IMG/VR virus record: IMGVR_UViG_3300023174_000040
Coordinates: 1-64,000 of that record
Direction: 5' to 3' (one strand)
Length of the DNA: 64,000 nucleotides
The notes under the pieces: generated by a model
What the model was told of the DNA's origin: nothing
What the model saw: the letters and a program-made list of their open reading frames with translations, nothing else
Databases searched by the model: none
Translations under genes and position numbers: made by a program
In this document: piece by piece, positions 18,086 to 56,402 of the stretch
Numbering within the stretch: position 1 is the first letter of the stretch
Layout: every line of letters starts with the position of its first letter

Positions 18086-18418
18086 ATGATAGCCTATTTG
18101 ATCAGTAGCAGAGAAGAAAAATTATCTGAAATATATTTGTCAGGTGATATTAGACAAATTTTAAATCTTCTTAATTGTGAAATTCATACTGAGATAGATT
18201 TGAAGAATGGAGATTGCCTACTTATTGACAAGCATTGTTTGTTACTTGTCAATAACTATTCTAAATTTTTTGAAATCGATGGGTTTCTCCCCAACCCAGA
18301 AAATGGTTTGATTATAGGTAAGGGTTTTACTGATCCTAAAAATAGCTTAGAATATTACAAGAATACAATAAAATATCACAATATGTTTTATCTTAAAGAA
18401 GTCTTCAATCACCAGTAA
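18086..18418 (+). CDS. DUF3846-like phage protein
   Basis: A(Y)LI...EI...GD...I..L..C......L.NGD.L.ID...LL pattern. Confidence 0.5.
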   Translation: MIAYLISSREEKLSEIYLSGDIRQILNLLNCEIHTEIDLKNGDCLLIDKHCLLLVNNYSKFFEIDGFLPNPENGLIIGKGFTDPKNSLEYYKNTIKYHNMFYLKEVFNHQ

Positions 18419-19269
18419 GCACCGTTCTCAACCATTTTATATTTTTTTGGGGTTTCGTTTTCTAATACACGAACCCAATGTTTATTGTAAAATACTTGTC
18501 CAATAATTTTACTATCCCATCTAGATCCCGCTATTCCGAAAAGTATCTGCAATGCTCCGCCAAGATGAATTGCCTTTTTTCCGCTAGTTTTGGCGAAAGA
18601 CACAAGGGGTAGTGAGCTGGCACCGGTACCGATTAATGCCACATCATAGTTTATGGCGTTCATTTGCTCTTTCATGTCTGCTATCATCTCGGACCAATCT
18701 TTATATTTGCTTGGTTCTCCGACACCTGGAGAGTGCTGATGACCCAATGTGATTAAATCAAATTTAGGCAAAATTCTTTTATCTTCCCATAGAACTTCTC
18801 TTTTATTATATTGGTTTCTGATTGTTTCCGGAAAACTAGTTACGACCAAAACTTTTTTATCTTTTAGATTTTGGGTCCAAGGAATTCCTGAATAATATGG
18901 TTCCAAGCTTCTTAATGGCACTAATGTAGAATTTGGTGAATATTTTTCTATAAATCTTTTTTCATATTCGATGTCATATGGGGACCAAAGCGAAAGACAA
19001 TCCATATCTTTAATGCAATAAATTAATTCATTTATAAAACTGATTTTTGCTTCTGTTGTTTGTGGAAAAATACCATTTTGATAATATGTCTTATATTCAA
19101 CTTCTTCTGTCCAGACCGGCTCCTGCCCCTTTTCATGATATTCAAAATAGTTTTTTACACATCTTAACTCATTGCATCCTATTTTGCCAGCAGCAAATGG
19201 TTCTTCATTATTGAATTTTGAAGAAAGGTGTGTGCTTGCATCTACGAAATCGTTTATATATTTTTGCAT
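18409..19269 (-). CDS. glycan-locus-associated protein (putative glycosyltransferase)
   Basis: DVALIGTGASSLPL..FAK..GKKAIHLGGALQILFGI.G.RW, a pattern recalled from polysaccharide loci. Confidence 0.55.
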   Translation of the reverse strand: MQKYINDFVDASTHLSSKFNNEEPFAAGKIGCNELRCVKNYFEYHEKGQEPVWTEEVEYKTYYQNGIFPQTTEAKISFINELIYCIKDMDCLSLWSPYDIEYEKRFIEKYSPNSTLVPLRSLEPYYSGIPWTQNLKDKKVLVVTSFPETIRNQYNKREVLWEDKRILPKFDLITLGHQHSPGVGEPSKYKDWSEMIADMKEQMNAINYDVALIGTGASSLPLVSFAKTSGKKAIHLGGALQILFGIAGSRWDSKIIGQVFYNKHWVRVLENETPKKYKMVENGAYW

Positions 19270-19925
19270 TTGTTTATTAAATACCTATTTAAATTGAATT
19301 TTATGAATTTTTCTTTTCTGTCAATGCCTGTTGCTTCTTGAAACCAATCTTGCGCTGTTAAATAATTGTTCTTATTAATATTCCAGTAAGGACTATGCAT
19401 TTTATGAAATAAAAATGGAAAATCTATTAAGTACACATCTAGATTTTGTTTGGTGGATATGTATAAAAGATACCAATCCCATGCACATTGGCCCATTAAG
19501 AACTTATCATTATCAAAAACAATCTTTTTATTTAAGATAAAGAAATCTAAACCATGCCAGTTTAGAACTGGGTTTTTTCCTTCGTCGTAATCATATTTGT
19601 GTCCGACAACTATAGAGTTTTCATCCAACTTGCTTGTTATCTTATTCCAATTTTCTTGATTTTGCTGAATCTTTATATCGCTATTTATTATGCAAAAATA
19701 TTCTGACTGGCTTTGTCCTATTCTTATTATATCTCTAATTCTTTGGAATTTTTTGCCATCAAAATTAGCGGCCTTATTATATATCTTTTCACAGTTAACC
19801 TCTATGTTTTCTGATGGGTCCTGTACCGCATATATTTTATTTGCAAAAAGTAGCCAGCTCTTATATTGTTGCCCAACATCTCTTGGGTTAAACGAGGTGT
19901 AAAAATCTAATTTCATCAAAAACAC
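19254..19925 (-). CDS. putative glycosyltransferase (GT-A-like)
   Basis: CIINSDI DxD-like motif, LDFFI, WDWYL; sits within the glycan operon. Confidence 0.5.
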   Translation of the reverse strand: MFLMKLDFYTSFNPRDVGQQYKSWLLFANKIYAVQDPSENIEVNCEKIYNKAANFDGKKFQRIRDIIRIGQSQSEYFCIINSDIKIQQNQENWNKITSKLDENSIVVGHKYDYDEGKNPVLNWHGLDFFILNKKIVFDNDKFLMGQCAWDWYLLYISTKQNLDVYLIDFPFLFHKMHSPYWNINKNNYLTAQDWFQEATGIDRKEKFIKFNLNRYLINKCKNI

Positions 19926-20848
19926 CTCATTTTTGAAAATTTATAATAAGCTGATAAACAATTATTTTTCATGAATTCTATTTTTTCATTATTATAAGAT
20001 TTTAGTATTTCCAATGTATTGATAGCCTCTTCTCTCTTTATGAATATTGCAATATCTTCCCAATTAAATTCTTTTATAATCGGAGGCTGCCACTCATCTG
20101 AAAAAATAACTGGTATAGAACCTATAGACATACTCTCCCATAATCTTAGAGTATTTGGCCCAGTACCCTCTGGACACAAAGAGAATATTGTATCCGATAA
20201 TATCTCATTGTATTTTTTTGTGTTTTTTTTATATTCCTCTAAATAAGATTCTTCTAGCTCTTCTTTTTTGATTTGTTTTCCATATACTATTTTGTGATAA
20301 AACCATCTTTCTTTTAATTCGTAAAGAGTTCCATCGACTCCTTCTAAATATTCTTTTAATTTCAATCTAATATCTGACCTGTATTGTTTTGAATTTGATC
20401 CTATAAAAGATGTTATATATTTTTTATCTTTATTATTTTTTATTATTAATCCTTCCCGCCGGTCTAGGTTCTCATAATTAACTGCTATCAATGGCCAGGA
20501 ATGAAAATTAAATTTGTCTGATCGATTGTTCTTTTCGCAGTGTGATAGATGAACATCTGACACCCCTATTTCTTTCCAAAGATTCTCAATATATCTCCAG
20601 CTAATATGCTGACAAACCGTATGAATTTTTTTACCTTTGAATTTTTCTATTTTTTCAAATATGAGTTCTCTATATTTTTTTAAGTTTATTCCTTCTTTTG
20701 AATGAGTTAAATTATCGATAAGAGTTGCCCATGGAAAAGCTAGGTATATATTTTCTTCATCTTTGATATAGATGTGATTGTTAAATGCTTGTTTTTCCGT
20801 TAATGCTGGATATTGCCAATCTAAATTTGTTTCTATAAAAATATGCAT
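19916..20848 (-). CDS. exostosin-family (GT47) glycosyltransferase
   Basis: FSLCPEGTGPNTLRLWESMSIGSIPVIFSD. Confidence 0.85.
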   Translation of the reverse strand: MHIFIETNLDWQYPALTEKQAFNNHIYIKDEENIYLAFPWATLIDNLTHSKEGINLKKYRELIFEKIEKFKGKKIHTVCQHISWRYIENLWKEIGVSDVHLSHCEKNNRSDKFNFHSWPLIAVNYENLDRREGLIIKNNKDKKYITSFIGSNSKQYRSDIRLKLKEYLEGVDGTLYELKERWFYHKIVYGKQIKKEELEESYLEEYKKNTKKYNEILSDTIFSLCPEGTGPNTLRLWESMSIGSIPVIFSDEWQPPIIKEFNWEDIAIFIKREEAINTLEILKSYNNEKIEFMKNNCLSAYYKFSKMRCF

Positions 20849-21135
20849 TAATTATTTTTTTTATTAAAATATGTTTCGCCTTCTTTGTCGACACTTATTT
20901 TTACTTTATTTTCTAAAAAGTTTTTTAATAATAAGGCCCCCACTCTGGCGTTTGTTGCCCATGCAACAATTTTTATCATGCTGTCTTCATCGGTTATTCC
21001 TTGATCAATACAATTTGAGAGTATCGAATCGAGCTCATCCATAGATAAAGCAGTATATTTTTTTTCAATTTCATTCCAATGCAGATCATCAGCCGCAATT
21101 ATATTGTTTAATGTTTCCCTGTATAAATTGCTCAT
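20848..21135 (-). CDS. hypothetical protein, first gene of the glycan operon
   Basis: SD AGGAGA; stop overlaps the GT47 start. Confidence 0.7.
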   Translation of the reverse strand: MSNLYRETLNNIIAADDLHWNEIEKKYTALSMDELDSILSNCIDQGITDEDSMIKIVAWATNARVGALLLKNFLENKVKISVDKEGETYFNKKNN

Positions 21136-21152
21136 AATATCTCCTTTTTCGT

Positions 21153-21180
21153 ATTATACATAGGTTAATTTAAAAATCAA
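21153..21180 (-). promoter_or_regulatory. sigma70-type promoter of the glycosyltransferase operon
   Basis: TTGATT-16-TATAAT on the - strand. Confidence 0.6.
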
Positions 21181-21297
21181 TAAATTCTGCATTATACTTA
21201 TCCGCTCCCAGATAAGGAGGGGTCATATTTAGCTGACCACCCGGTCATAGGTATGGTCTACTTGATCAAAAATTAATAAACTAGAATATATACTTTT

Positions 21298-23103
21298 ATG
21301 GAAAACAACAAACAAATTATCGCTATGCTTGATGGAAAAGAAATCCGCATCTCCAAAGAAAGAAAATGCGGAGCCTCCTGTATGGCTAAAAATGATCCCC
21401 GCCTTATTGCAAATTTAAACCAAATTGAGGCATTAAGATCTAGGGGTCCGATAAGCTCAGATAGTGTTGTTACCATACCAATAGTTTTTAATGTAATATC
21501 TAATCCTAATTTACCTTGGACAAATATCACCGATGCAAAACTAAATGAACAGGTAAATCAGTTAAATTTAGATTATTCCGGAAACAACCCAGACGTTGTT
21601 AATTTACCTTGTGTTTTTGCTCCTTATTTACCAAGTGGAACAGGAATAAGATTTGAAATAAATCAAATAAGAAGAAAGGTCTCAAATACACTTATATTTT
21701 CGAAAGGCAACTTTTTTGGCAATTGGGCTCTTCAAGAAAGTATGAAGTATGAACCGGCCGGACTTAATCCGATATTAATACTTCCTAATAATATAAAGCC
21801 TCTTAATATATGGGTTTGTCTTTTTAATAATGATGGACTAATAAGCAGCGATCCGGATTTACTAGGATATAGTTATTTCCCCGATTTTCAGGATGGTTCA
21901 GCGGATTTTTTAAGAAATGATGGCGTGGTTGTCCAGCCATACTGCGTTGGAAGCAATAATAGTCCAACCTTTTTACCAAATGGCACTTCCAGCACGTTTG
22001 GTAGGGGTCGCACATTAACCCATGAAATTGGGCACTGGTTGGGTCTACGTCATACTTGGTTCGACGATGAGGTTAGGGACGCCCAAGGCAACCATCTCAG
22101 TTGGCTTTGTAATTCGAGTCCTGATGATATTCCGCCAAAAAAAGGTCCATCATATGGGTGTCCTTCCTTCCCTAATCTTTCTGGCCACCCCGTGGAGGGC
22201 TCTTGTTTTCCAAGCTCTCCAAACGGTGATCTCACCGTTGGTCTTGGTATAAGTAAATTTCCGCTTGTTGAAGGTTCTGGTACTTTATTCATGAATTACA
22301 TGGATTATGTAGATGATTCTTGTATGATTATGTTTACCAAATCCCAAAGAGACATAATGAGGGGTTTCCTTTCGACAAGGTTTAGGAAATCATCCATAAT
22401 CAGTGTGACTTCTCCATTCCCGAGCTCTATATCTGTGCCTTGTACACCTACTATTACACTGACCAAAACAATAAGGCCTACCAAGACGCCCACGCCCACT
22501 TGCACATCCACTCTAACATTAACTCCTACTCGCACATCCACTCCAACATTAACTAACACACTAACATTAACTAAAACTATCAGGCTCACAAAAACTCCTA
22601 CTCCAACTTTAACATCAACTCCAACATCAACACCTACTCCCACACCAACATTAACTAAAACTATCAGGCTCACAAAAACGCCTACTCCAACATCCACGCC
22701 TACTCCAACATCCACGCCTACTCCAACTCAAACATTAACAAGAACAATTAGAACTACAAGAACACTTACTCCGACTCCAACGTTGACACCAACCTCAACA
22801 AAAGGAAGTTTGCCTGGTACTCCAACTAATTTAATTGTGACATCAAACGGTGCCGGATCTGTTAGTATAGCTTGGGCTGTACCATTATCAGACGGCGGCA
22901 GAACAATAAATAGTTATATTATCAGATATACCCGTGACCAAGTTAATTATAGTTATAAAACAGTGGCATCTACAGGTATGATGAATGCAACAACAGTTTC
23001 AAGCTTAGTTGTGGGTTCAACATATACATTCAGGGTCGCAGCAATTAACTCTGAAGGACAAGGGGGATGGTCGACTGGTTTTCAATTTCTTGTTACCTCT
23101 TGA
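21298..23103 (+). CDS. M43 (pappalysin/ulilysin-like) zinc metalloprotease + Thr/Pro linker + FN3 domain
   Basis: [16 protein letters not shown]; MNYMDY Met-turn; PGTPTNL..W..PLSDGG..I..Y...[14 protein letters not shown]. Confidence 0.9.
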
Positions 23104-23189
23104 TATATTGGATATTCACATCCCTCATTACTTGTGACGTATCTTTTGTTGTTTTATAACAAAAAATCAACAAAAAACGTATATATTTT

Positions 23190-25091
23190 ATGGAAAACGA
23201 AAAAATCGTCCATATATCCGAGAACATCAGGAGATGTGGAGTAGACGAAATAATTAGGAGAGACCCCGCTCTCAGAAGAACCCTCAAAGCAGCTAATATT
23301 CACGCATTAGAAGTCACTCTCAGCTCAGATAGTGTTGTTACCATACCAATAGTTTTTAATGTAATATCTAATCCTAATTTACCTTGGACAAATGTTACTG
23401 ATGCAAAACTAAATGAACAAGTAAATCAGTTAAATTTAGATTATTCCGGAAACAACCCAGACGTTGTTGATTTACCTTGTGTTTTTGCTCCTTATTTACC
23501 AAGTGGAACAGGAATAAGATTTGAAATAAATCAAATAAGAAGAGCAAATTCAACCAAACTTTTCTCGGCTGGCGGAACTGGCGCTGATTGGATCCTTAAT
23601 GAAAGCATGAAATTTTCTAATCAAGGAGGAATAAATCCAATATTAACGCTTGCTAATGGTATAAAGCCTCTTAATATATGGGTTTGTTCTTATAATTCTG
23701 ATGGTAATCCATCAACTGGATATGACCTTTTAGGATATTCTTATTATCCTCATTACTCCATTTACGGCTCAAATTATGCGAGAAATGATGGTGTCGTGGC
23801 TATATCCTACAGTGTGGGCAGCCGCAATAGCCCAACAACTGACCCAAAAGGAAGAACATTTTTTGGTTTAGGTCGAACATTGACCCATGAAATTGGGCAC
23901 TGGTTGGGTCTTGCTCACACATGGAACGACAACGAGGTTACAGACGAGGCAGGTAAGCATATTCGATGGGTTTGTGACGCAAGTCCATTTGATTTGCCGC
24001 CTCAAAAAGGCTATTCATTTGAATGCCCTTCTTTCCCTAATTTCAATAACATAGAAGGTGGCTGTTTTCCGAGCAGCCCAGGTGGTGATCCCACCGATGG
24101 TCTTTACACGGGCCTCTTTCCACTTGTCGAGGGCTGTGGTAGTTTATACATGAATTATATGGATTATGTTGATGACTCTTGTATGATTATGTTTACCAAA
24201 TCCCAAAGGGATATAATGAGGGGTGTCCTCTCATCAGTGTATAGAAATAACTCAATAATCAGGACGACCTCTCCATTCCCGAGTGCCATATCTGTTAATC
24301 CTTGCACACCAACACTCACTAGAACAAATACTTCCACTCCCACCAAAACTTTAACTCCTACACCCACCAAAACGCCAACACTAACCCAAACCAAAACGCC
24401 TACCCAGACTCCAACAAAAACCCAGACTTTAACTATAACTCCCACATTAACTGGAACTCCAACATTAACCCCTACATTAACAAAAACCCCAACCTTAACC
24501 AGAACGATGCGAGTTTGGCCTGTACCTGGGACGACACGTGTAACGCAAACTCCAACATTAACCACCAATTCTCAAACCCCCACCCTGACCAGAACCCCAA
24601 CTTTAACCAATACTCCGACCCTAACTAGTTCTCAAACACCAACAAGGACTAGCACACCCACTCCCACTCCAACTAATACGCCCACCTCAACTTCTACTCC
24701 CACTCAAACATTAACCAAAACAATTAAGCTTACTAAAACCCCAACTTTAACACTTACGCCGACTCCAACATTAACACCAACCTCAACAAGAGGAGGCTTA
24801 CCTGGTACTCCAACGAATTTAATTGTGAGATCAAACGGTGCTGGGTCCGTTAGTATAACCTGGTCGGCACCACTATCAGATGGAGGCAGAATGATAAATA
24901 GTTATATTGTCAGATACACCCGTGACCAGGTCAATTATAATTTTAAAACAGTGGCATCTGGAGGTCTGATGAATGCAACAAATGTTTCAAGCTTAGTGTT
25001 AGGTTCAACTTATACATTCAGAGTTGCAGCAATTAACTCTGAAGGACAAGGGGCATACTCGACTGGTGCTCAATTTGTTGTGCCCTCTTGA
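23190..25091 (+). CDS. M43 zinc metalloprotease + Thr/Pro linker + FN3 (tandem paralogue)
   Basis: [22 protein letters not shown]; same architecture as the preceding gene. Confidence 0.9.
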   Translation: MENEKIVHISENIRRCGVDEIIRRDPALRRTLKAANIHALEVTLSSDSVVTIPIVFNVISNPNLPWTNVTDAKLNEQVNQLNLDYSGNNPDVVDLPCVFAPYLPSGTGIRFEINQIRRANSTKLFSAGGTGADWILNESMKFSNQGGINPILTLANGIKPLNIWVCSYNSDGNPSTGYDLLGYSYYPHYSIYGSNYARNDGVVAISYSVGSRNSPTTDPKGRTFFGLGRTLTHEIGHWLGLAHTWNDNEVTDEAGKHIRWVCDASPFDLPPQKGYSFECPSFPNFNNIEGGCFPSSPGGDPTDGLYTGLFPLVEGCGSLYMNYMDYVDDSCMIMFTKSQRDIMRGVLSSVYRNNSIIRTTSPFPSAISVNPCTPTLTRTNTSTPTKTLTPTPTKTPTLTQTKTPTQTPTKTQTLTITPTLTGTPTLTPTLTKTPTLTRTMRVWPVPGTTRVTQTPTLTTNSQTPTLTRTPTLTNTPTLTSSQTPTRTSTPTPTPTNTPTSTSTPTQTLTKTIKLTKTPTLTLTPTPTLTPTSTRGGLPGTPTNLIVRSNGAGSVSITWSAPLSDGGRMINSYIVRYTRDQVNYNFKTVASGGLMNATNVSSLVLGSTYTFRVAAINSEGQGAYSTGAQFVVPS

Positions 25092-30081: not shown

Positions 30082-30092
30082 ATAAATATGTA

Positions 30093-30121
30093 TTGAAAAA
30101 ACTGATTTTTTTTGGTATAAT
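30093..30121 (+). promoter_or_regulatory. sigma70-type promoter
   Basis: TTGAAA-17-TATAAT with an extended -10 (TGG). Confidence 0.6.
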
Positions 30122-30154
30122 TTTATCTCAAGCCAGGTTAAAAAAGGTTTAATT

Positions 30155-31453: not shown

Positions 31454-31485
31454 TTACTCCTGTGAATTAAAAGAAAGGCAAATAT

Positions 31486-31581: not shown

Positions 31582-31587
31582 CTTATT

Positions 31588-31800
31588 GTGAAAGAAAATA
31601 ATATATTTTCAGTGGGTTTGGTGGGTGGACCTCTTTGCGGCCAGGCTGTGACAAGCAAAGATGGAAGGATGCCAAATATTCTCCCTATCCCATATAAAAG
31701 AAAAAAATATACCTATAAATTAAAAATAAACAATAAATCAAAAGATTACACAGAGATATACTATCAATATTATGTAGAAAAAGGAATGGACAATGGGTGA
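31588..31800 (+). CDS. hypothetical protein
   Basis: GTG start; GGPLCGQ motif. Confidence 0.55.
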   Translation: MKENNIFSVGLVGGPLCGQAVTSKDGRMPNILPIPYKRKKYTYKLKINNKSKDYTEIYYQYYVEKGMDNG

Positions 31801-32332
31801 ATTATCTGAATTATCAAAAAACTACGGTACCGATAAGAACACATTGCATTGTTATATTGATGAAGTCTATGAAAAGGTGTTCCCAAGTAGAAAGAACTCG
31901 GCCAAAAAGGTTCTTGAAATTGGTGTCTATAATGGAGAAAGTATAAGGTTGTGGAGAGATTATTTTATCAATGCAGAAATTTATGGTCTAGATATCTCGG
32001 AGTGCAGTGCGATTAAAAACTCAGACAGAATAACCCATGTTGTAAATGATGCTTATGATAAGAGTGTTATAGACTCTCTTCCAAATGATTTTGATATTGT
32101 TATTGACGACGGCCCCCACTCACTAGAGAGTATGAAGATATTTTTAAAAGAATATTCGAGCAAAATTAATCCGAATGGTGTGCTAATTTTAGAGGACATT
32201 CAACACTATAGTTGGCTGGATGAATTGAGAGAAGAAGCACCAGAACATCTTAAAAATAAAATTCAATTTTATGATCTAAGAAAAATAAAAGATAGATACG
32301 ATGATCTTGTTATGGTGATTGATCTAAGATGA
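31793..32332 (+). CDS. class I SAM-dependent methyltransferase (sugar O-methyltransferase-like)
   Basis: GTDK...H.Y; VLEIGVYNGES..LW..YF; GLDI; FDIVIDDGPH; ILEDI. Confidence 0.85.
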   Translation: MGELSELSKNYGTDKNTLHCYIDEVYEKVFPSRKNSAKKVLEIGVYNGESIRLWRDYFINAEIYGLDISECSAIKNSDRITHVVNDAYDKSVIDSLPNDFDIVIDDGPHSLESMKIFLKEYSSKINPNGVLILEDIQHYSWLDELREEAPEHLKNKIQFYDLRKIKDRYDDLVMVIDLR

Positions 32333-40213: not shown

Positions 40214-40214
40214 C

Positions 40215-50135: not shown

Positions 50136-50138
50136 ACA

Positions 50139-50146
50139 TTATATAT
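50139..50146 (-). promoter_or_regulatory. putative late promoter ATATATAA, 3 nt before the kinase ATG
   Basis: CAT-ATATAATGT-ATG on the - strand. Confidence 0.55.
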
Positions 50147-51059
50147 GAACATTAGATACGGAATTTGTTGTATTATTCTCTCGTTAGAGGAAAATGATCC
50201 TCCAAAGAAATTTCAAAGAATGACTTATAAAAAGTTTAGTCAAACTCCAAGAGAAGAGGCCGTGACTGAACTTAGCAAAAGAATACTCAATAATATTGAT
50301 GTTACATTCAATGCTATAAAGTATTGTAAAGAACGTAATTTTAATTATAGGCTAAGTAGCGACTTATTTTCATTGATAACGTATGATAAGGCCGATTTAT
50401 CGCTAGAGCAATTGCCGGATTATGATAAAATAATTGATCTTTTCAAGCAGATAAAAGAATATAATGCTGTGAACAGTGTTAGGATAAGCCTGCACCCTGA
50501 TCAATTCAATGTCCTTGCCAGCAAAGATGAAAATGCTTTATCAAGAACTATTAAGGAATTAAATTTTTATAGCTGGGTTATGGATCAAATTGGATGCTCT
50601 GCTGATTATAACTCCCCTATAAACCTTCATATAAATAACAATCAGGATAGTTGTGAGGAGATAATCGATAGGCTATCTGCTAGTTTAGATATATTGGATG
50701 ACAATTGCAGGTCTAGGATAGTTTTTGAGAATGACGATAAAACAAAGTGTTGGAGTGTAAAAAAACTATCTGGATTTTATTATAAAAAATTTAATTCGCC
50801 AATTACTTTCGACTTTCTCCATCACAAATGCCACCCGGACGGATTATCGGAGAAAGAGGCGTTCGAACTCTGCTGTCACTCTTGGGGCAGTTTTAAGCCC
50901 CTGTTCCACTACAGTGAGTCTCGGGATGAAAAGAATCCAAGAGCACACGCAGACTATCCTTCAAATATTCCCAGCTTTTACGACAGCGAAATTGACATAG
51001 ATTTTGAGTTTAAGAAAAAAGAAAAAGCTATTGAAAAATTCATTACTCTAAACCATTAG
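50145..51059 (+). CDS. uvsE: UV-damage endonuclease
   Basis: YRLSSDLF, SLHPDQFNVLAS, FENDD, TFDFLHH, PLFHYSES, AHADY. Confidence 0.92.
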   Translation: MNIRYGICCIILSLEENDPPKKFQRMTYKKFSQTPREEAVTELSKRILNNIDVTFNAIKYCKERNFNYRLSSDLFSLITYDKADLSLEQLPDYDKIIDLFKQIKEYNAVNSVRISLHPDQFNVLASKDENALSRTIKELNFYSWVMDQIGCSADYNSPINLHINNNQDSCEEIIDRLSASLDILDDNCRSRIVFENDDKTKCWSVKKLSGFYYKKFNSPITFDFLHHKCHPDGLSEKEAFELCCHSWGSFKPLFHYSESRDEKNPRAHADYPSNIPSFYDSEIDIDFEFKKKEKAIEKFITLNH

Positions 51060-52581
51060 ATATTTTATAATTATCTGTTAAGGTTTCCATTATATCTTTA
51101 TTTTCATAATTCTCAGATCTGACTGAATCTGGATGTGGCATATGAATTATACATGGTTTGTTATGGTTTAAATATTTTCTTTCCAAACCAATGCCAGTTA
51201 ATCTATTGAATATATCGCAATCTTCATATCCATAATTTTTCATCAATTCGTTATATCCGCCTATTTTTATCAAATTTTCTCTGTGAACATAAAGGAATCC
51301 GTGTAAATATCTAATAAATCCCATATCATTGTCGATCAGGAAATCTTCCCAGTTACCTGTTAGAAACTCATTTTTTTTAATTTTATATTCTTGAAAAAAG
51401 TCGTAATATGGATTTAAAATATAATCCACATCCATTTTTATAATCAAGTCGCCACAGGTATTTTTTATTGCTAAATTTGGTGCTTTTACAACTGAAAAGT
51501 ATTTTTCATTTTCTACCCTGATTACTTTAATCCGATTATCCAACTTTGATAGGTAAGATATGTCTTCATCTGAGGACCAATCTACTATTACATATTCTTT
51601 TATATCTTTATGTTTTATCCATGATTGAATAGATATTTTCAGCATATCAGTTCTGTTCTTAACAGAACAAATCAATGAAATAGTTTCTTCTTTTTTTGGA
51701 ACTAATTTTACTTCTTGTTTTTTTGCTATAATTAATGGAATTTTATTTATCTTTGAGGAGATGTATGAAAAGCTACTCCAATTTGATCCTATTATTTTTT
51801 TTGTTCCAGACAATAACATCATATCAATCAATGCATCTTTTTGACCTGGTTTACTTTCTAAATGATTTATGTTTTTAAAAAACTTTTTATCTTTGTTCCA
51901 TAATAAATTTGGAAATTTATTTACAAAATAGTTGTTGGTATCCTCACAGTCTGTTGATAAGAAAAAATTACAATCTGGATTTGCTTCCATTTCTTCATTT
52001 ATTTTAATCACAAATGACTCATTATCGGAAATGCCAAACTTGTCTTTCCATGGACTTGTTGTTGAGTCTCCTCTTCTTATGTGAATCCCTATGGTATTTT
52101 TATTAAAAGACTTTCTTATATTCTTTATTTTATTTTGTATTTCTGGTTTGAATTTTAAACTTTTAATGAAGTCATACTTGCCATAATTGTGCCACAAAGA
52201 ACTTAGCATGTATTCAATGCAAGAATCGCCACAATAACAAAAAGAATTTTTTTTAATAAAATCAATTATTGAATTTTGTTCAATTTCTTGAACATATTCG
52301 TCTGGATTTTTTTCATTTTTGTAAACCACCCTGTCTAGATTAAAATTATCTTTGCTGAATTCTTCATATTCTTTTTCATTTATGAATTTTAATTTTGTTT
52401 TTTGAAACAAGTCGTAGAATTTCTCATCAGACCACCCTGCTCCCCCACCCCAGAGAACTCTTAATTCGAAATTATTCTCTTCTGCAAAATTGTAAAAAGA
52501 ATTCAAAGTGCGCAATCTATTTGCCAATCCATGTTTTACTTTGATGCAAATAATTCTATTAGAAGGCTCCATATCTCTCAT
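51043..52581 (-). CDS. bifunctional glycosyltransferase: alpha-fucosyltransferase-like (GT11/NodZ type) + GT2/GT7-like
   Basis: GLANRL, IGIHIRRGD, FLSTD, SSFS; then VIVDWSS, MDVD, GGYNE..KNYGYED. Confidence 0.8.
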   Translation of the reverse strand: MRDMEPSNRIICIKVKHGLANRLRTLNSFYNFAEENNFELRVLWGGGAGWSDEKFYDLFQKTKLKFINEKEYEEFSKDNFNLDRVVYKNEKNPDEYVQEIEQNSIIDFIKKNSFCYCGDSCIEYMLSSLWHNYGKYDFIKSLKFKPEIQNKIKNIRKSFNKNTIGIHIRRGDSTTSPWKDKFGISDNESFVIKINEEMEANPDCNFFLSTDCEDTNNYFVNKFPNLLWNKDKKFFKNINHLESKPGQKDALIDMMLLSGTKKIIGSNWSSFSYISSKINKIPLIIAKKQEVKLVPKKEETISLICSVKNRTDMLKISIQSWIKHKDIKEYVIVDWSSDEDISYLSKLDNRIKVIRVENEKYFSVVKAPNLAIKNTCGDLIIKMDVDYILNPYYDFFQEYKIKKNEFLTGNWEDFLIDNDMGFIRYLHGFLYVHRENLIKIGGYNELMKNYGYEDCDIFNRLTGIGLERKYLNHNKPCIIHMPHPDSVRSENYENKDIMETLTDNYKISNGLE

Positions 52582-52617
52582 AAGAGGATTGAATTTTTAA
52601 TTTTTTACCCCTCTCGG

Positions 52618-52634
52618 TTTCCTTTTGGTACGGT
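52618..52634 (+). promoter_or_regulatory. 17-bp motif, copy 8
   Basis: TTTCCTTTTGGTACGGT in a divergent intergenic gap. Confidence 0.75.
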
Positions 52635-52669
52635 TGATAACGGGAAGGTCCACAGAGAATTTGTCTTAA

Positions 52670-53263
52670 ATGTTTAAAAAAATAATTGCACCCCTGTCGT
52701 TGCTGTTTATTTGTTGTTTTTCCTTAAAAGCCCAGGAAGAATCGACAGATCGAATTACTACCACACAAGACGATAATGGTTATTTCAACACTATTGAAGA
52801 AATTTGCGAAGCAGCAAACGCAGAAGATCACAATAAATATCTTTCTCTTCGTGTGAGTTCCACTAAAAGAGAGAAGAGAGAAATTGCACTGTTCTTTTTG
52901 TCTAATAAAATTAATATATCTATATTAGACAAAAAGTTAATAGATATTAAGGATGATTTTGCCGAGATAGCAGTTGAATACAAAATGACTGTTAATGAAA
53001 CAAACAATATTATTGTGAGCTTACTTGCAATGAAAAAAATAGACTCTGATTGGAAGCTAATCAAAGAGACGGTGATTAGTAAGAAACTGGAATCCCGGTG
53101 TAGGAGTGGAAATTGTCGTGCTGTTGATAATGATTTTTCTAACCCTCCTAGACTAAATTGCCCCAATGGTAAATGTCGTGCCGTGGGCGATAGTCCTTTG
53201 TCTTTGCCTCCAAAGCCTAATTGTGCTAACGGCAGGTGCAATCTTCTTATGAGAATTGAGTAA
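52670..53263 (+). CDS. secreted NTF2/SnoaL-like protein with three CxxGxC repeats
   Basis: Sec signal MFKKIIAPLSLLFICCFSLKA; DWKLIKETVI; CRSGNC, CPNGKC, CANGRC. Confidence 0.6.
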   Translation: MFKKIIAPLSLLFICCFSLKAQEESTDRITTTQDDNGYFNTIEEICEAANAEDHNKYLSLRVSSTKREKREIALFFLSNKINISILDKKLIDIKDDFAEIAVEYKMTVNETNNIIVSLLAMKKIDSDWKLIKETVISKKLESRCRSGNCRAVDNDFSNPPRLNCPNGKCRAVGDSPLSLPPKPNCANGRCNLLMRIE

Positions 53264-53293
53264 AAAAAATAAAATAGTTTAATAAATAACCTC

Positions 53294-53458
53294 ATGAAGG
53301 TTATTTGTGAAAACAATGATTATTATCCTGCCGCTCTTAAGACCGGCAACGTCTATGATGTCTATATTGCAAAAGATTCTACTTTTATCATAATTGATGA
53401 ATTTCTTGAAAATCAAGAATATCCAAGAAATATATTCAAGATAATGGAACATTCTTGA
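53294..53458 (+). CDS. 54-aa hypothetical protein (not in the ORF track)
   Basis: MKVICENNDYYPAALKTGNVYDV...IIDE...YP; fits the + strand operon. Confidence 0.65.
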   Translation: MKVICENNDYYPAALKTGNVYDVYIAKDSTFIIIDEFLENQEYPRNIFKIMEHS

Positions 53459-53480
53459 CAATTTGATTATAAGCTTTAAA

Positions 53481-53888
53481 ATGTTCAGGATGAACTTATC
53501 TAAAGTAATAGAAATTAGTTATGCCTTGGCGGGCAAACACAGGGGAAATCATAGGTGCCGCCATTTTAGTTTTATTTATGAAAGAAATACATTAATCTCT
53601 GTGGGGATGAACAGCGCAAAAACTCATCCATTAAATTTAAAATATAATTATATCAACAAGCAAAAAGATAAAATTAGTGATATTGTTGGCACCCATTCTG
53701 AATTGAGTGCAGTTCTAAAATTAGGCTATGAAGATTGTAGTGGACTAACAATAATAAATACAAGAATCAACCGCAGAAACGAGGTTGATTATAGTCGCCC
53801 GTGCATAGGATGCATGGATATGTTGACTCAACTTGGCTTTAAAAGAATTTTATACACAACTAAAGACAAGACGTTTTTAGAGATATGA
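53481..53888 (+). CDS. zinc-dependent cytidine/dCMP-deaminase-like protein (start 53481 or 53490)
   Basis: HSE and PCIGC motifs. Confidence 0.8.
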   Translation: MFRMNLSKVIEISYALAGKHRGNHRCRHFSFIYERNTLISVGMNSAKTHPLNLKYNYINKQKDKISDIVGTHSELSAVLKLGYEDCSGLTIINTRINRRNEVDYSRPCIGCMDMLTQLGFKRILYTTKDKTFLEI

Positions 53889-54940
53889 TAGATAAACTAA
53901 TAGATGATGGTTACGTTAATGTAGTGAAGCATCCTACTGACGAACTATTTATCTACAATTATACTGCTCGGGCACAATATGAAAATAAGTGGGCAGAATA
54001 TCCTGAGATTAGGAAATATAGAGGTCTGATATTGGACCCTTCAGGACAAATAGTGGGTAAATCTTTTGATAAGTTTCATAACTTAGAAGAATATTCTGAA
54101 AATAGTATTCTCGGTCCATTGCCGGATTACAACGATTTCGAAGTTTATGACAAACTAGACGGCAGCCTGGGTATATCGTATAAATACTCTGGGGGTGTTG
54201 CTATAGCAACAAGAGGCAGTTTCACATCAGAGCAGTCCTTTTGGGCCACCAACCATCTAAATAAAAAATATCCAAACTTTAACCCGCCAGATGATTTGAC
54301 TTTTCTTTTTGAGATATTATATAAAAAAAATAGAATAGTTGTTGATTATGATTACGAGGGATTAGTTTTACTTTCTGTTTTTAGAAAAGAAATAGAATTA
54401 TCTCGAGAAGAAATAGAAGTTATTTCAAAAGAGTATGATTTTGAATTAGTGGAAAAGTTTGATGGGATAAAAGATTTTGATAATATAAGAACTCTTTATG
54501 CAAGAGATAATGCCGAAGGCTTTGTGATAAAGTTCGATAATGGATTAAGGGTAAAATTAAAATATGAAGAATATTGTCGATTGCATAAAATAGTCACAGG
54601 TGTAAATTCTAAGATAATATGGGAAATGCTAAAAGAGAACAAAAACTTTGATGAAATTTTAGATCATGTCCCCGATGAATTTTACGATTGGGTAAAAAAC
54701 ACAAGAGACGCCATACAGGAAAAATATGAAGGAATAATTGAATCTGCGGAAGAAAAGAAAGAAAGTATTAAAAATTTAACAAGAAAAGAGCAGGCAGAAA
54801 TTATACTTCGGGATTGCAGAGACTATTCCGGTGTGGTATTCTCTCTGCTTGATAATAGGCCAGATAAGGCAAAAGAAATAAGTTGGAAATTAAGCAAGCC
54901 AGAAAATGATAAGCCGTTTAAGGATGAACAACAAGGCTGA
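53885..54940 (+). CDS. T4 Rnl1-like RNA ligase
   Basis: DKLDGS, ATRGSF, FEIL...NRIVVDY, EGFVI, RVKLK motifs. Confidence 0.9.
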   Translation: MIDKLIDDGYVNVVKHPTDELFIYNYTARAQYENKWAEYPEIRKYRGLILDPSGQIVGKSFDKFHNLEEYSENSILGPLPDYNDFEVYDKLDGSLGISYKYSGGVAIATRGSFTSEQSFWATNHLNKKYPNFNPPDDLTFLFEILYKKNRIVVDYDYEGLVLLSVFRKEIELSREEIEVISKEYDFELVEKFDGIKDFDNIRTLYARDNAEGFVIKFDNGLRVKLKYEEYCRLHKIVTGVNSKIIWEMLKENKNFDEILDHVPDEFYDWVKNTRDAIQEKYEGIIESAEEKKESIKNLTRKEQAEIILRDCRDYSGVVFSLLDNRPDKAKEISWKLSKPENDKPFKDEQQG

Positions 54941-54954
54941 GATAAGGGGGATTT

Positions 54955-55542
54955 ATGATTAATATTAAACCACGCCTCCAACCAGAAGATTTTGAATTCT
55001 GGTTTAGTGTTCGTGGCTTTAGCAACTATGAAAACTACTGCTCGGAAACTAAAGAAAAAATTTCAACCGATCCCAGGTTCGCTTTTAAATATGCGGAAAA
55101 ATTTGGGCCTCTTCCAGAAGAGTGTGAATCTGTATTTTTAAAGAGTCCCGAATATGCTTATAATTATTCTTATTGGATAAAAAATAAAAGACTTTCTCCT
55201 AAACTTGAGAAAGTTTTTTCCCGATGTCCTAAGTGGGCTTATATTTATGCAAAAAAAATAATTAAAGGTAGATTGCCAAAAAGCATAGAAAAAGCTTTCT
55301 TAAAGTCACCCGAATATGCACTGCAGTACGCATACCTCATTGGTAAGCTGGAAGAAGATTTAGAATTTGTTTTTTTAGAAGATTGTGAACTTGCTCTAAA
55401 ATACGCAAGAGAGATAATAAAGAAAGGATTCTCGGGAAAAATGCACAATGCATTATTTTTAAAATTTTCTTTTGAGAAAAATAATGGTTATCAAAAACTT
55501 CATCTATCTCAGTACTTTCAAGAGTTTCCACAACCAACCTAG
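54955..55542 (+). CDS. helical-repeat hypothetical protein
   Basis: About 25-aa repeats P..A..YA...I..RL...E..F. Confidence 0.7.
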   Translation: MINIKPRLQPEDFEFWFSVRGFSNYENYCSETKEKISTDPRFAFKYAEKFGPLPEECESVFLKSPEYAYNYSYWIKNKRLSPKLEKVFSRCPKWAYIYAKKIIKGRLPKSIEKAFLKSPEYALQYAYLIGKLEEDLEFVFLEDCELALKYAREIIKKGFSGKMHNALFLKFSFEKNNGYQKLHLSQYFQEFPQPT

Positions 55543-55547
55543 TTCAA

Positions 55548-56402
55548 TCAACCTAATAAAATACTTATATTTTTTAATAACTCCGTATCATTTGCGATTT
55601 CTGCTTCGTTTATAAAATTATCTATATTTAAAACTTTTTGTCTTAATGTAAGGGTGTTAGTTTTTATTTTTTTTTGTTTTGGAGTTCCACTGATATCAAA
55701 GAAGTTTTTGGGATCCTCTCCTAAAAATTTAATAATATTCTTATAAAAAGAAATATAATTTTCTCCTGTTAAATTTTCATAAGTCACATGTTGATAATCA
55801 ATATTGTTCCTTAAACAGAAGTTAAATACTATTTCTTCTTCTTCTAATAAATCTTTTTTATACTCAATAAATTCTTTGTAAAATACATTGATTCCAATTG
55901 AATGAAATTTTATTGATTCTAATTCTGAATTATAATTTTTTGTAATGCCTGCTGTTTTGTGCGAAATATATTTCAAAAAGATATTATTACGAGTCAAATG
56001 TATAATTTTTATATTATTATTTTTTATATATTTTAAAAAATTGCTGATCCCGATATGGTCTCCTGGCGGCAATTTATTATTGGTTCCTATGTGATGACTA
56101 AAAAATACCTTAAATCCAAAATGTTCCGACTGTTTTATCTCCTCCCAAATCTTTAAATATTCAATAAAGTTTCTGTTTCTGTTTCCTATAAATTGATTCG
56201 GATCACTACCAAATAAGATTTCACATCTTTTTCTAACTTCTGAATTGTTTTCTGCTAAATTCAATAAATTTAAACACGGTCTTACTTTGTATGGATGAAA
56301 TATCTCATACTGGCAACGTATGCTTTTTTGACTATCGAGGAACTCACATAGCATCTGAGACCCACTTCTGGGTGTTGTAACTATTATAAATTTTTTTGCC
56401 AT
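55548..56402 (-). CDS. Stf0-like sulfotransferase
   Basis: TTPRSGSQML (5'-PSB), EIFH, IIHLTRNN, TYENL. Confidence 0.75.
   Translation of the reverse strand: MAKKFIIVTTPRSGSQMLCEFLDSQKSIRCQYEIFHPYKVRPCLNLLNLAENNSEVRKRCEILFGSDPNQFIGNRNRNFIEYLKIWEEIKQSEHFGFKVFFSHHIGTNNKLPPGDHIGISNFLKYIKNNNIKIIHLTRNNIFLKYISHKTAGITKNYNSELESIKFHSIGINVFYKEFIEYKKDLLEEEEIVFNFCLRNNIDYQHVTYENLTGENYISFYKNIIKFLGEDPKNFFDISGTPKQKKIKTNTLTLRQKVLNIDNFINEAEIANDTELLKNISILLG

What the first reader, a model, noticed from the sequence alone, without database searches (positions are those of the whole stretch)
18409..56402. Possible phage-encoded glycocalyx system: glycan enzymes plus in-genome Thr-rich acceptors
The window encodes GT47 and two further putative glycan enzymes in one operon (18409-20848). 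It also has a sugar-type methyltransferase (31793), a fucosyltransferase-like/GT2 fusion (51043) and an Stf0-like sulfotransferase (55548). The same genome encodes hundreds of Thr residues in mucin-like linkers. Hypothesis: the phage builds methylated, fucosylated or sulfated O-glycans on its own appendages. This would parallel glycosylated fibrils of giant viruses and might mimic or bind sulfated matrices around Planctomycetes. Modification of the host surface or of DNA is an alternative.
Basis: inference. Interest (0 to 1): 0.8.

Follow-up and report, generated by a model that had tools for sequence, protein, structure and literature searches.

The report
Huge-phage glycan toolkit, acceptor unproven
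A roughly half-megabase freshwater phage encodes about ten sugar-transferring enzyme domains, several methyl- and sulfo-transferases and fifteen threonine-rich proteins, but the idea that the enzymes coat those proteins with sugars is plausible and not shown.

Summary
The window is the first 64 kb of a 323-kb IMG/VR contig (about 64% complete) of a tailed phage with a T4-type terminase, found in lake metagenomes. ORFs 21135-18409 (minus strand) form four overlapping genes. Three are glycosyltransferases: GT47, a GT-A fold and a GT-D-like fold. ORF 51043-52581 is a two-domain enzyme, a NodZ/FUT8/POFUT-like domain with an HIRRGD motif plus a GT2/Glyco_transf_7C domain. ORF 55548-56402 is a PAPS-type sulfotransferase and 31793-32332 is a SAM methyltransferase. 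Outside the window lie GT17-like, GT25-like+methyltransferase and three GT2 genes and a second sulfotransferase.

Fifteen ORFs carry TxTx or poly-Thr tracts (about 843 Thr). Several resemble virion or baseplate proteins. None has a signal peptide or membrane segment.

The enzymes belong to a modular cassette shared with other large phages and with giant-virus contigs, and domain fusions link its parts. Co-occurrence with Thr tracts is weak: 9 of 15 GT47-carrying records have tracts, but two near-complete genomes have none, including the closest near-complete relative. Proximity within this genome is marginal (p about 0.05-0.3). No route to DNA glycosylation was found. Virion-protein glycosylation is my leading reading (about 0.4) and host-envelope remodelling the main rival (about 0.3).

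The parts
20848..21135 (-). 95-aa ORF of unknown function, first gene of the four-gene overlapping operon
   Evidence: Shares base 20848 with the GT47 ORF. No Pfam hit. A sigma-70-like site lies at 21180-21153 on the minus strand, a consensus match only.
19916..20848 (-). GT47 (exostosin-type, GT-B fold) glycosyltransferase, soluble
   Evidence: Pfam PF03016 at E=1.1e-17, above cut-off. PDB sequence hits to EXT1/2 and chlorovirus A075L. AF2 model with Foldseek best hits EXT1/EXT2/EXTL3. 152 homologues, about 50% identical on 100-500 kb contigs. No hydrophobic segment.
19254..19925 (-). GT-A-fold (GT2-like / C2185-like_N) putative glycosyltransferase
   Evidence: No Pfam or NCBIfam hit. ESM Atlas model (pTM 0.86) matches GT2 clusters at TM 0.64-0.72 and a C2185-like_N cluster at TM 0.81.
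18409..19269 (-). GT-D-like putative glycosyltransferase
   Evidence: Pfam GT-D-like at E=7.6e-5, below cut-off. NCBIfam GT-D_rel at E=7.5e-4. Atlas structure TM 0.94 to GT-D-like clusters. Homologues sit beside GT47 on giant-virus loci L031, L035 and L037 and phage locus L019.
31793..32332 (+). Class I SAM-dependent methyltransferase (Methyltransf_24 type), substrate unknown
   Evidence: Pfam PF13578, PF13847 and PF13489 above cut-off. Only a faint sugar-O-MT hit. Homologue in G015 at 35% identity.
51043..52581 (-). Bifunctional enzyme: N-terminal fucosyltransferase-superfamily domain (about residues 10-290, HIRRGD motif) and C-terminal GT-A domain (about 300-500, DxD at 384-386, His 480/483)
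   Evidence: Pfam. Invariant residues in 16 homologues. AF2 pLDDT 89.1. Foldseek against PDB and against viral models. In relatives the N-domain is fused to GT47 instead.
55548..56402 (-). PAPS-type sulfotransferase, soluble
   Evidence: Pfam Sulfotransfer_1 above cut-off; Stf0 hit only over residues 5-41. The N-terminal TTPRSGS loop can be read in the sequence. Nearest Atlas clusters are Sulfotransfer_3/1/Stf0.
1..1156 (-). ORF with a C-terminal (TTAAP)n tract that runs off the contig start
   Evidence: The contig begins inside the 15-nt tandem repeat.
6455..10915 (+). 1486-aa RCC1-repeat protein with two poly-Thr/TTTVAP tracts
   Evidence: Pfam RCC1/WD40_RLD at E=7.5e-101. Tracts listed.
12241..16428 (+). 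1395-aa RCC1-repeat protein, 19.6% Thr, six poly-T/TxT tracts (214 Thr)
21298..23103 (+). M43-like metallopeptidase motif, 138-aa TxT linker, then FN3 domain
   Evidence: Pfam. The FN3 part hits tail-protein PHROGs. Tract listed.
23190..25091 (+). Paralogue of the previous ORF, with a 179-aa TxT linker and FN3
56689..57849 (+). 386-aa protein, 22.5% Thr, 121-aa TxT tract; hits a virion-structural PHROG
   Evidence: phrog_19691 at E=2.2e-9. Tract listed. Starts 287 nt from the sulfotransferase gene.
57792..62696 (+). 1634-aa protein similar to virion structural and baseplate proteins, with a TPTLTN tract
   Evidence: PHROGs 701, 708 and 9158. Tract listed.

Best explanation
The window belongs to a roughly 0.5-Mb freshwater tailed phage. 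It carries a dispersed set of soluble glycan-building enzymes: GT47, a GT-A enzyme, a GT-D-like enzyme, a fucosyltransferase-like/GT2 bifunctional enzyme, a sulfotransferase and a methyltransferase. Outside the window it also has a GT17-like gene, a GT25-like+methyltransferase fusion, three GT2 genes and a second sulfotransferase.

These are versions of a modular viral glycan cassette found in other large phages and in giant viruses.

The most likely mechanism has three steps. During infection the enzymes take host nucleotide sugars, SAM and PAPS. They assemble a branched, partly methylated and sulfated heteroglycan in the cytoplasm, directly on phage proteins before or during virion assembly. 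In this phage the long TxT and poly-Thr tracts of structural or appendage proteins are the likely acceptors, which would give a glycan coat on the virion's projections.

Shown: the enzyme families and folds, their solubility, the conservation and fusion of the cassette, the Thr tracts, and the structural-protein affinities of some carriers.

Inferred: that the enzymes act together, every donor and linkage, and above all the acceptor.
For: - Enzyme identities rest.
- One pathway: in relatives, GT47, the NodZ-like domain, GT2/7C, GT17, GT61, GT25, Methyltransf_24 and sulfotransferases sit in single clusters. The NodZ-like domain is fused either to GT2/7C or to GT47, and GT25 or a pyruvyl transferase is fused to GT2/7C.
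- No membrane segment or signal peptide in any enzyme or any Thr-rich ORF. This fits cytoplasmic modification of proteins released at lysis.
- Thr-rich ORFs hit virion-structural or baseplate PHROGs, or lie beside the portal.
- Neighbourhood: the GT47 operon lies between Thr-rich ORFs (450 nt and 1981 nt away) and the sulfotransferase is 287 nt from one. A (PPATE)9-tailed ORF sits inside the second glycan operon at 316-321 kb, next to a TPR protein. G015's cluster also has a TPR protein.
- The nearest viral structural relatives of the fusion enzyme include Mimiviridae glycosyltransferases. GT47 and its GT-D-like neighbour recur on giant-virus contigs. Giant viruses use such soluble enzymes on capsid or fibril proteins (PMC9614988).
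- Phage-encoded virion glycosylation has precedent: Freeman et al. 2023, as cited in PMC12619734 and PMC10877033.
- 9 of 15 other GT47-carrying phage records have long TxT tracts.
- Tracts are kept in a 95-98% identical strain.
Against: - Co-occurrence is not general. G015 (459 kb, 91% complete, TerL 51% identical, 120 of 420 ORFs shared) has a GT4-GT47, GT25, GT1 and MT24-GT61 cluster but no Thr- or Ser/Thr-rich ORF.
- G008 (231 kb, terminal repeats) also has none.
- Records with fusion-enzyme homologues have tracts in 4 of 18 (one probably out of frame), no more than terminase relatives at 4 of 17.
- G028 has ten Thr-rich ORFs but no homologue of the nine enzymes tested in 144 kb.
- Adjacency is not conserved. 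No relative has a Thr-rich ORF within 10 kb of GT47, except at one contig edge.
- The in-genome proximity test is marginal: p=0.05 for the median distance, 0.14-0.31 for the count within 5 kb.
- In relatives, and partly here, the cassette sits among DNA ligase, UvdE, endonuclease VII and RNR genes, not among structural genes.
- No initiating protein O-glycosyltransferase was recognised (no GT1/GT4 hit in the contig).
- The folds match enzymes that act on glycans as well as ones that act on proteins.
- No expression data: no RNA run was listed.
Confidence: 0.4

Rival explanations
1. Host envelope remodelling. The enzymes act at the cytoplasmic face of the membrane on the host's lipid-linked precursors (LPS, capsule or exopolysaccharide). 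They change the infected cell's surface, for example to block superinfection or alter aggregation. The Thr tracts are unrelated spacers.
For: - Cellular homologues of the GT47 are proteobacterial 'exostosin domain' proteins.
- GT25 is an LPS-type family.
- The C-terminal domain of the fusion resembles polysaccharide polymerases such as K4CP and chondroitin synthase.
- Peripheral glycosyltransferases of envelope pathways also lack membrane segments, so one search does not discriminate.
- The enzymes occur in phages without Thr tracts.
- Current surveys class huge-phage glycosyltransferases as envelope-associated auxiliary genes (bioRxiv 10.64898/2026.10.24.761521).
- The cassette lies among early-type DNA-metabolism genes.
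Against: - The ORFs scanned with Pfam include no initiating phosphoglycosyl transferase, flippase, polymerase or exporter, but no targeted search for them was run.
- The family mix (GT47, GT17, GT61, NodZ-like, sulfo- and methyltransferases) is shared with giant viruses of eukaryotes, where a bacterial envelope cannot be the target.
- A TPR protein and a Pro/Thr-repeat protein sit inside the glycan operons.
Confidence: 0.3
2. Phage proteins are glycosylated, but not at the Thr tracts. The acceptors would be the capsid or other structural proteins, as in chlorovirus capsid glycans. The tracts are plain extended spacers or repeats that vary in length.
For: - Relatives with the cassette but no tracts still need an acceptor.
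- The chlorovirus GT47-like A075L acts on a capsid-protein glycan (PDB hits).
- Tract lengths vary between strains, as spacers do.
Against: - The local neighbourhood of GT47 and the sulfotransferase with tract genes in this genome.
- 9 of 15 GT47-carrying records have tracts.
Confidence: 0.15
3. DNA hypermodification. The transferases build glycans on modified bases of phage DNA to evade restriction.
For: - Phage glycosyltransferases classically glucosylate DNA, and diverse DNA glycans are known (Pyle et al. 2024, as cited in PMC12619734).
- The cassette neighbours DNA ligase, UvdE and a Dam-type methylase.
Against: - No thymidylate-synthase-like hydroxymethylase in the contig, nor in the GT47-carrying near-complete genomes G008 and G006.
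- No TET/JBP hit in five records, although that control search rang nowhere.
- Sulfotransferases, fucosyltransferase-like domains and GT47/GT17 are not known DNA-modifying families (my own knowledge).
- The contig is only about 64% complete.
Confidence: 0.05
4. There is no single system. The dispersed genes are independent acquisitions with unrelated substrates, and grouping them is an artefact of annotation.
For: - In this genome they occupy at least ten separate sites over 323 kb.
- The window's sulfotransferase has no homologue in the relatives' clusters, which use Sulfotransfer_4 instead.
Against: Clustering and domain fusion of the same families in relatives.
Confidence: 0.1

Closest known systems
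Virion glycosylation in mycobacteriophages (Freeman et al. 2023, Cell Host Microbe; cited in PMC12619734 and PMC10877033)
   Same: Phage-encoded soluble glycosyltransferases would modify virion proteins in the cytoplasm before lysis, and the glycans would coat exposed parts of the particle.
   Different: In mycobacteriophages a few glycosyltransferases act on the C-termini of capsid and tail-tube subunits, and this was shown by experiment. Here there are about ten GT domains of other families, plus sulfo- and methyltransferases. The putative acceptors are long internal TxT/poly-Thr tracts in accessory structural proteins, and nothing has been shown experimentally.
Giant-virus glycan machineries: chlorovirus PBCV-1 capsid glycans (A064R, A075L, A111/114R) and mimivirus fibril glycan clusters (PMC9614988)
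   Same: Virus-encoded soluble enzymes that include a GT47-like enzyme (A075L), fucose-centred glycans, methyltransferase partners and multi-domain glycosyltransferases. The phage GT47 subfamily and its GT-D-like neighbour occur on giant-virus contigs, and the fusion enzyme's best viral structural matches include Mimiviridae proteins.
   Different: The host is a bacterium. A075L is only a distant match (PDB E=0.026, TM about 0.42). Giant-virus clusters usually also make their own nucleotide sugars, and none was found here. The review has no occurrence of the word 'sulfotransferase'.
Serine-rich-repeat adhesin glycosylation in streptococci (GtfA/B initiators, GT-D/DUF1792 and SP_1767-type extenders)
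   Same: Cytoplasmic O-glycosylation of very long Ser/Thr repeat tracts. A GT-D-type enzyme sits next to a C2185-like GT-A enzyme, the two domains that SP_1767-family proteins combine.
   Different: No GtfA/B-type GT4 initiator (no Glycos_transf_1 hit in the contig). No accessory Sec system. The roles of the streptococcal enzymes are recalled from my own knowledge and were not tested here.
Glycosyltransferase auxiliary genes of cyanophages and huge phages, presumed to target the host envelope
   Same: GT47-like and fucosyltransferase-like genes occur in Synechococcus phages (S-SKS1; S-SCSM1) and in a 735-kb uncultured phage. Function is untested there too.
   Different: This genome pairs them with two sulfotransferases and an unusual load of Thr-tract structural proteins.
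T-even phage DNA glucosylation and related DNA hypermodification
   Same: Phage-encoded glycosyltransferases in a lytic phage.
   Different: No hydroxymethylase or TET/JBP was found, and the enzyme families differ.

Membership tests
CAZy GT47 / Pfam Exostosin_GT47 (ORF 19916-20848) | Sequence match above the curated cut-off | tested here: met
   64.7 bits against a cut-off of 33.4.
CAZy GT47 / Pfam Exostosin_GT47 (ORF 19916-20848) | GT-B fold closest to known GT47 structures | tested here: met
   AF2 pLDDT 89.8. The top 16 Foldseek hits are EXT1/EXT2/EXTL3 at TMq 0.51-0.63.
CAZy GT47 / Pfam Exostosin_GT47 (ORF 19916-20848) | Inverting transfer from a UDP-sugar to a glycan acceptor | not testable with these tools
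   Needs an enzyme assay.
GT-D fold glycosyltransferases (ORF 18409-19269) | Sequence match above the curated cut-off | tested here: not met
   PF22882 scores 22.6 bits against 27. NF040628 scores 19.2 against 75.
GT-D fold glycosyltransferases (ORF 18409-19269) | GT-D-like three-dimensional fold | tested here: met
   Atlas model pTM 0.93. TM 0.94 to a cluster carrying PF22882, but only 0.58 to classic PF08759 GT-D clusters. It belongs to the 'GT-D-like' group, not the canonical DUF1792 family.
Fucosyltransferase superfamily GT11/GT23/GT37/GT65/GT68 (ORF 51043-52581, N-domain) | Conserved HxRRxD-type nucleotide-binding motif | tested here: met
   H167, R169, G171 and D172 are invariant and R170 is at least 90% conserved in 16 homologues. 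That this motif defines the superfamily is from my own knowledge.
Fucosyltransferase superfamily GT11/GT23/GT37/GT65/GT68 (ORF 51043-52581, N-domain) | Fold like NodZ/FUT8/POFUT | tested here: met
   Foldseek hits POFUT2, NodZ, AtFUT1, FUT8 and POFUT1 at E=1e-9 to 8e-8. Pfam hits of the query itself are below cut-off, but homologues carry PF05830 NodZ.
Fucosyltransferase superfamily GT11/GT23/GT37/GT65/GT68 (ORF 51043-52581, N-domain) | GDP-fucose as donor, and whether the acceptor is a protein or a glycan | not testable with these tools
   Both protein O-fucosyltransferases and glycan fucosyltransferases are among the hits.
Mucin-type initiating enzymes, GT27 polypeptide GalNAc-transferases (ORF 51043-52581, C-domain) | GT-A catalytic domain with GT2 and 7C signatures, DxD and a C-terminal His | tested here: met
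   Pfam GT2 and Glyco_transf_7C. D384, D386, H480 and H483 are invariant. ppGalNAcT structures are among the hits.
Mucin-type initiating enzymes, GT27 polypeptide GalNAc-transferases (ORF 51043-52581, C-domain) | Closest to GT27 rather than other GT-A families, plus a ricin-type lectin domain | tested here: not met
   Chondroitin synthases, a Leptospira GT2 and K4CP rank above the ppGalNAcTs. No lectin domain. It should not be filed as GT27.
PAPS-dependent sulfotransferases (ORF 55548-56402) | Family match above cut-off and a 5'-phosphosulfate-binding loop | tested here: met
   Sulfotransfer_1 scores 26.6 against 22. The TTPRSGS loop at residues 9-15 is read from the sequence. Atlas neighbours carry Sulfotransfer_3/1/Stf0.
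Stf0 trehalose sulfotransferase family (ORF 55548-56402) | Full-length match to PF09037 | tested here: not met
   Only residues 5-41 align and no stretch passes on its own. No PDB relative by sequence.
Phage virion-glycosylation systems (mycobacteriophage type) | Glycosyltransferase genes next to the genes of the modified structural proteins | tested here: inconclusive
   True for the GT47 operon and the sulfotransferase here. The permutation p is 0.05-0.31, and the adjacency is absent in relatives.
Phage virion-glycosylation systems (mycobacteriophage type) | Glycans demonstrated on virion proteins | not testable with these tools
   Needs virions and mass spectrometry.
Serine-rich-repeat protein glycosylation systems | GtfA/GtfB-type GT4 initiating pair | tested here: not met
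   No PF00534 match in the 323-kb contig. The contig is about 64% complete.
Phage DNA glycosylation systems | An enzyme that makes a hydroxymethylated base (ThyA-like hydroxymethylase or TET/JBP) | tested here: not met
   No PF00303 hit in G000, G008 or G006. G015 has one strong ThyA-family hit. No PF12851 hit, but that control rang nowhere.

The most novel reading that the evidence does not exclude
A huge bacteriophage coats its own appendages with a mucin-like layer. Hundreds of clustered Thr residues in structural proteins would carry fucose-containing, methylated and sulfated O-glycans. These would be built in the bacterial cytoplasm by a modular enzyme cassette that large phages share with giant viruses of eukaryotes. 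It would be the first sulfated glycoprotein coat described on a bacterial virus.
Probability: 0.2. Interest if true: 0.85.

Novelty: new variant of a known kind. Interest (0 to 1): 0.55.

Why it matters
If the enzymes do decorate the virion, glycan coats would extend from giant viruses and a few mycobacteriophages to environmental huge phages. Sulfation would be added to the known chemistry. Such coats could affect adsorption, aggregation, grazing and stability in lakes.

One result does not depend on the acceptor. A conserved, domain-shuffling glycan cassette (GT47, NodZ-like, GT2/7C, GT17, GT25, GT61, methyl- and sulfotransferases) is shared between large phages and giant-virus contigs. It is a concrete, testable set of soluble enzymes for glycobiology and a marker of gene flow between very different viruses.

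If the target is the host envelope instead, these would be unusually elaborate auxiliary genes for surface remodelling.

Tried and rejected
- Megablast of 20 kb of the window against GenBank phages found no match.
- Single-protein scans of IMG/VR with the GT47 and with the fusion enzyme found nothing. Alignment-based scans worked.
- Adjacency of Thr-rich ORFs to GT47 in 47 related loci was essentially absent, so adjacency is not a conserved feature.
- Terminase-clade records as a comparison group: none of the 18 fragments carried GT47, so a clean 2x2 table was not possible.
- G016 turned out to be a 95-98% identical strain covering 70.5-323 kb. It extends the contig by only about 3 kb, so it could not complete the genome or link the two ends.
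- Searches for ThyA-like, TET/JBP, APS kinase, epimerase, nucleotidyl-transferase and GT1 genes in the contig were all negative. The phage apparently relies on host donors, within the 64% of the genome that is held.
- Host inference from the GMP reductase was inconclusive: a Flavobacteriales MAG at 51%, then mixed phyla including two Planctomycetes at 45-48%. No tRNA in the window.
- I considered whether this is a 'moraphage' (PMC12619734). Those genomes are 200-307 kb and this one is estimated at about 500 kb, so no membership is claimed.
- No RNA run was listed for the GT47 gene, so I did not use read laying.
- The paper by Freeman et al. is not held in the library. It is cited only through papers that cite it.

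Full report
What the window is.

The window is bases 1-64000 of a single 323,267-bp IMG/VR virus record with 35.8% G+C. The record is linear and CheckV puts it at about 64% complete. It has a T4-type large terminase at 274.5-276.2 kb and a portal at 312.5-315.0 kb. It is therefore a tailed phage of about half a megabase. Stretches of the GT47 region occur in many independent lake and freshwater metagenomes. A 95-98% identical strain (G016) covers 70.5-323 kb. The closest near-complete relative found is G015: 459 kb, TerL 51% identical, 120 of 420 ORFs shared.

Checking the observation: the enzymes.

Four minus-strand ORFs (21135-20848, 20848-19916, 19925-19254 and 19269-18409) overlap by 1-16 nt.
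- The second is a GT47 enzyme. It scores above the Pfam cut-off. Its AF2 model (pLDDT 89.8) matches the GT47 domains of EXT1/EXT2/EXTL3 best.
- The third has no sequence-family hit, but its Atlas model is a GT-A fold. It is close to GT2 clusters and to the C2185-like_N domain.
- The fourth is GT-D-like by structure (TM 0.94), though it falls below the cut-off by sequence.

ORF 51043-52581 is a two-domain enzyme.
- The N-domain has the invariant H-I-R-R-G-D motif. It folds like NodZ, FUT8, POFUT1/2 and plant FUT1.
- The C-domain is a GT-A fold with GT2 and Glyco_transf_7C signatures and invariant D384/D386 and H480/H483. It is nearest to chondroitin synthases, K4CP, b4GalT and, lower in the list, polypeptide GalNAc-transferases.

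ORF 55548-56402 is a PAPS-type sulfotransferase. The 'Stf0' label rests only on the N-terminal loop.

ORF 31793-32332 is a class I SAM methyltransferase. No test here supports a sugar substrate for it beyond context.

Outside the window the contig adds:
- a GT17-like gene (150334-151269);
- three GT2 genes (about 144, 164 and 234 kb);
- a GT25-like+Methyltransf_24 fusion (316270-317427);
- a TPR protein with a methyltransferase-like C-terminal part (317576-318829); the methyltransferase part is my own reading of the sequence, not a tool hit;
- a second, stronger sulfotransferase (320271-321071).

The ten-odd enzyme ORFs checked for hydrophobic segments (the window's enzymes) have none, and no N-terminal signal-like sequence.

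Checking the observation: the Thr tracts.

Fifteen ORFs have at least 40% Thr over at least 30 residues, about 843 Thr in all. A pattern of ten alternating Thr codons occurs 301 times, against 0 for the reversed control. The carriers include:
- two giant RCC1-repeat proteins;
- two paralogous proteins built of an M43-like peptidase motif, a linker and an FN3 domain;
- proteins that hit virion-structural and baseplate-wedge PHROGs;
- an ORF beside the portal.

None has a signal peptide or membrane segment. The tracts are kept in the sister strain, with small length changes.

Do the enzymes form one system?

In this genome they are scattered. Relatives argue that they belong together. GT47 homologues of 40-54% identity lie on 100-508 kb contigs inside clusters. 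Those clusters hold GT61, GT1-like, GT17, GT25, STELLO-like, Methyltransf_24 and Sulfotransfer_4 genes, plus either a NodZ-like+GT2/7C or a NodZ-like+GT47 fusion. Homologues of the fusion enzyme show repeated domain shuffling: NodZ-like with GT2/7C or GT47, and GT25, a pyruvyl transferase or TPR repeats with GT2/7C.

The same GT47 subfamily, often with the GT-D-like neighbour, is also found on giant-virus (GVMAG) contigs. The best viral structural matches of the fusion enzyme include Mimiviridae glycosyltransferases and a cyanophage fucosyltransferase. This is a modular viral glycan cassette.

What is the acceptor?
- Among 15 other phage records with the GT47, 9 have long TxT tracts. The near-complete G008 (231 kb, terminal repeats) and G015 have none. 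A direct scan of all G015 ORFs found no Thr-rich or Ser/Thr-rich ORF, although G015 has a cluster of GT4-GT47 (1730 aa), GT25, GT1-like and MT24-GT61 genes next to a TPR protein.
- Among 18 records with homologues of the fusion enzyme, 4 match, one of them probably out of frame.
- Among 17 terminase-clade fragments other than the same-species strain G016, 4 have tracts and none contains the GT47. Most cover 8-33% of their genomes.
- G028 (TerL 75% identical) has ten Thr-rich ORFs in 144 kb and no homologue of the nine enzymes tested.
- Thr-rich ORFs are not within 10 kb of GT47 in relatives, except once at a contig edge.
- In this genome, enzyme loci are somewhat closer to Thr-rich ORFs than random genes are. 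The median-distance test gives p of about 0.05, and the count within 5 kb gives 0.14-0.31.
- GT17-positive records of useful size are all tract-positive (4 of 4), against 5 of 10 for GT17-negative ones. This is suggestive, but the numbers are too small.

Overall, the association is real in some lineages, but it is neither necessary nor general.

Other acceptors.

DNA. No ThyA-like hydroxymethylase occurs in this contig or in G008 and G006. No TET/JBP hit was found either, though that control was uninformative. The families present are not known DNA-modifying ones (my own knowledge).

Host envelope. This cannot be excluded, for four reasons:
- peripheral envelope glycosyltransferases are also soluble;
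- cellular GT47 homologues are proteobacterial;
- the cassette often sits among DNA ligase, UvdE, endonuclease VII and RNR genes, not among structural genes;
- current surveys class such genes as envelope-associated.

Four things favour a protein acceptor instead:
- the sharing of the cassette with viruses of eukaryotes;
- TPR proteins beside glycan genes in both this phage and G015;
- a (PPATE)9-tailed small ORF inside the second glycan operon;
- the local neighbourhoods in this genome.

No nucleotide-sugar or PAPS synthesis genes were found, so donors must come from the host.

Verdict.

A virus-encoded cytoplasmic glycan toolkit is well supported. That it modifies virion proteins is the leading but unproven reading (about 0.4). 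That the Thr tracts are the acceptors is plausible for this phage, but the comparative data weaken it. The Planctomycetes host is unsupported.

Compared with known systems, this would be a new variant of virus-encoded virion glycosylation. That is known from mycobacteriophages (Freeman et al. 2023) and from giant viruses (PMC9614988). The differences are the enzyme families, the sulfotransferases and the mucin-like scale of the putative acceptors.

Noticed in passing
window 1-1156 (minus strand), repeat at about 1-125: The contig begins inside a 15-nt tandem repeat that encodes (TTAAP)n at the C-terminus of an ORF. The assembly probably broke in a Thr-rich repeat, so the true genome continues here.
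   Followed up: partly
window 21298-23103 and 23190-25091: Two tandem paralogues with an M43 (pappalysin-type) zinc-peptidase motif, a 138-179-aa TxT linker and a C-terminal FN3 domain. They may be virion-borne peptidases on flexible stalks.
   Followed up: partly
window 6455-10915 and 12241-16428: Two giant RCC1-repeat (beta-propeller) proteins of 1486 and 1395 aa with poly-Thr tracts. G028 and G006 have RCC1 homologues that also carry tracts.
   Followed up: partly
window 47914-54940; L005/L006: The neighbourhood of ATP-dependent DNA ligase, UvdE and T4 Rnl1-like RNA ligase around the fusion enzyme is partly shared with relatives, where UvdE and DNA ligase flank the GT47 cluster. The ancestral position of the cassette seems to be among DNA-repair genes. 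The GT47 operon's position between Thr-rich genes looks derived.
   Followed up: partly
G000 contig 316270-323224 (outside the window; locus L050): A second minus-strand glycan operon: a GT25-like+Methyltransf_24 fusion, a TPR protein with a methyltransferase-like C-terminal part (my own reading), an unknown 326-aa ORF, a 154-aa ORF ending in (PPATE)9, a strong sulfotransferase and a beta-helix (tailspike-like) protein. The last is 1055 aa in strain G016 but is cut by the contig end here.
   Followed up: partly
loci L022-L049, for example L031, L035, L037: The phage GT47 subfamily (29-38% identity) and a GT-D-like neighbour occur on giant-virus metagenome-assembled contigs (GVMAG). This points to gene exchange or a shared pool between large phages and Nucleocytoviricota.
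   Followed up: partly
G015 (L055:7425-12617): In the closest near-complete relative, the GT47 domain is part of a 1730-aa multi-domain protein with an N-terminal GT4 domain. Beside it lie GT25, GT1-like and MT24-GT61 genes and a strongly TPR-rich protein. That genome has no Thr-rich ORF.
   Followed up: yes
G000 against G016 (for example 199295-202387 and 295900-298233): Thr-tract lengths differ between two 95-98% identical strains (114 against 82 aa; 33 against 47 aa), while flanking domains are 93-99% identical. The tracts behave as variable-length repeats.
   Followed up: partly
window 39134-42140 and 3139-4173: A MoxR/CbbQ-type AAA ATPase with a CobT-like VWA partner, and a GMP reductase. 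These are typical auxiliary genes of large aquatic phages. The GMP reductase's best cellular match is a Flavobacteriales MAG (51%).
   Followed up: partly
window 18001-22000, 30001-32000, 50001-52000, 54001-56000: The glycan-enzyme genes lie in the lowest-GC 2-kb bins of the window (30-32%, against 35.8% overall). The relatives' clusters have similar GC (30-33%). This fits a mobile cassette with its own composition, or the lack of GC-richer Thr codons.
   Followed up: no
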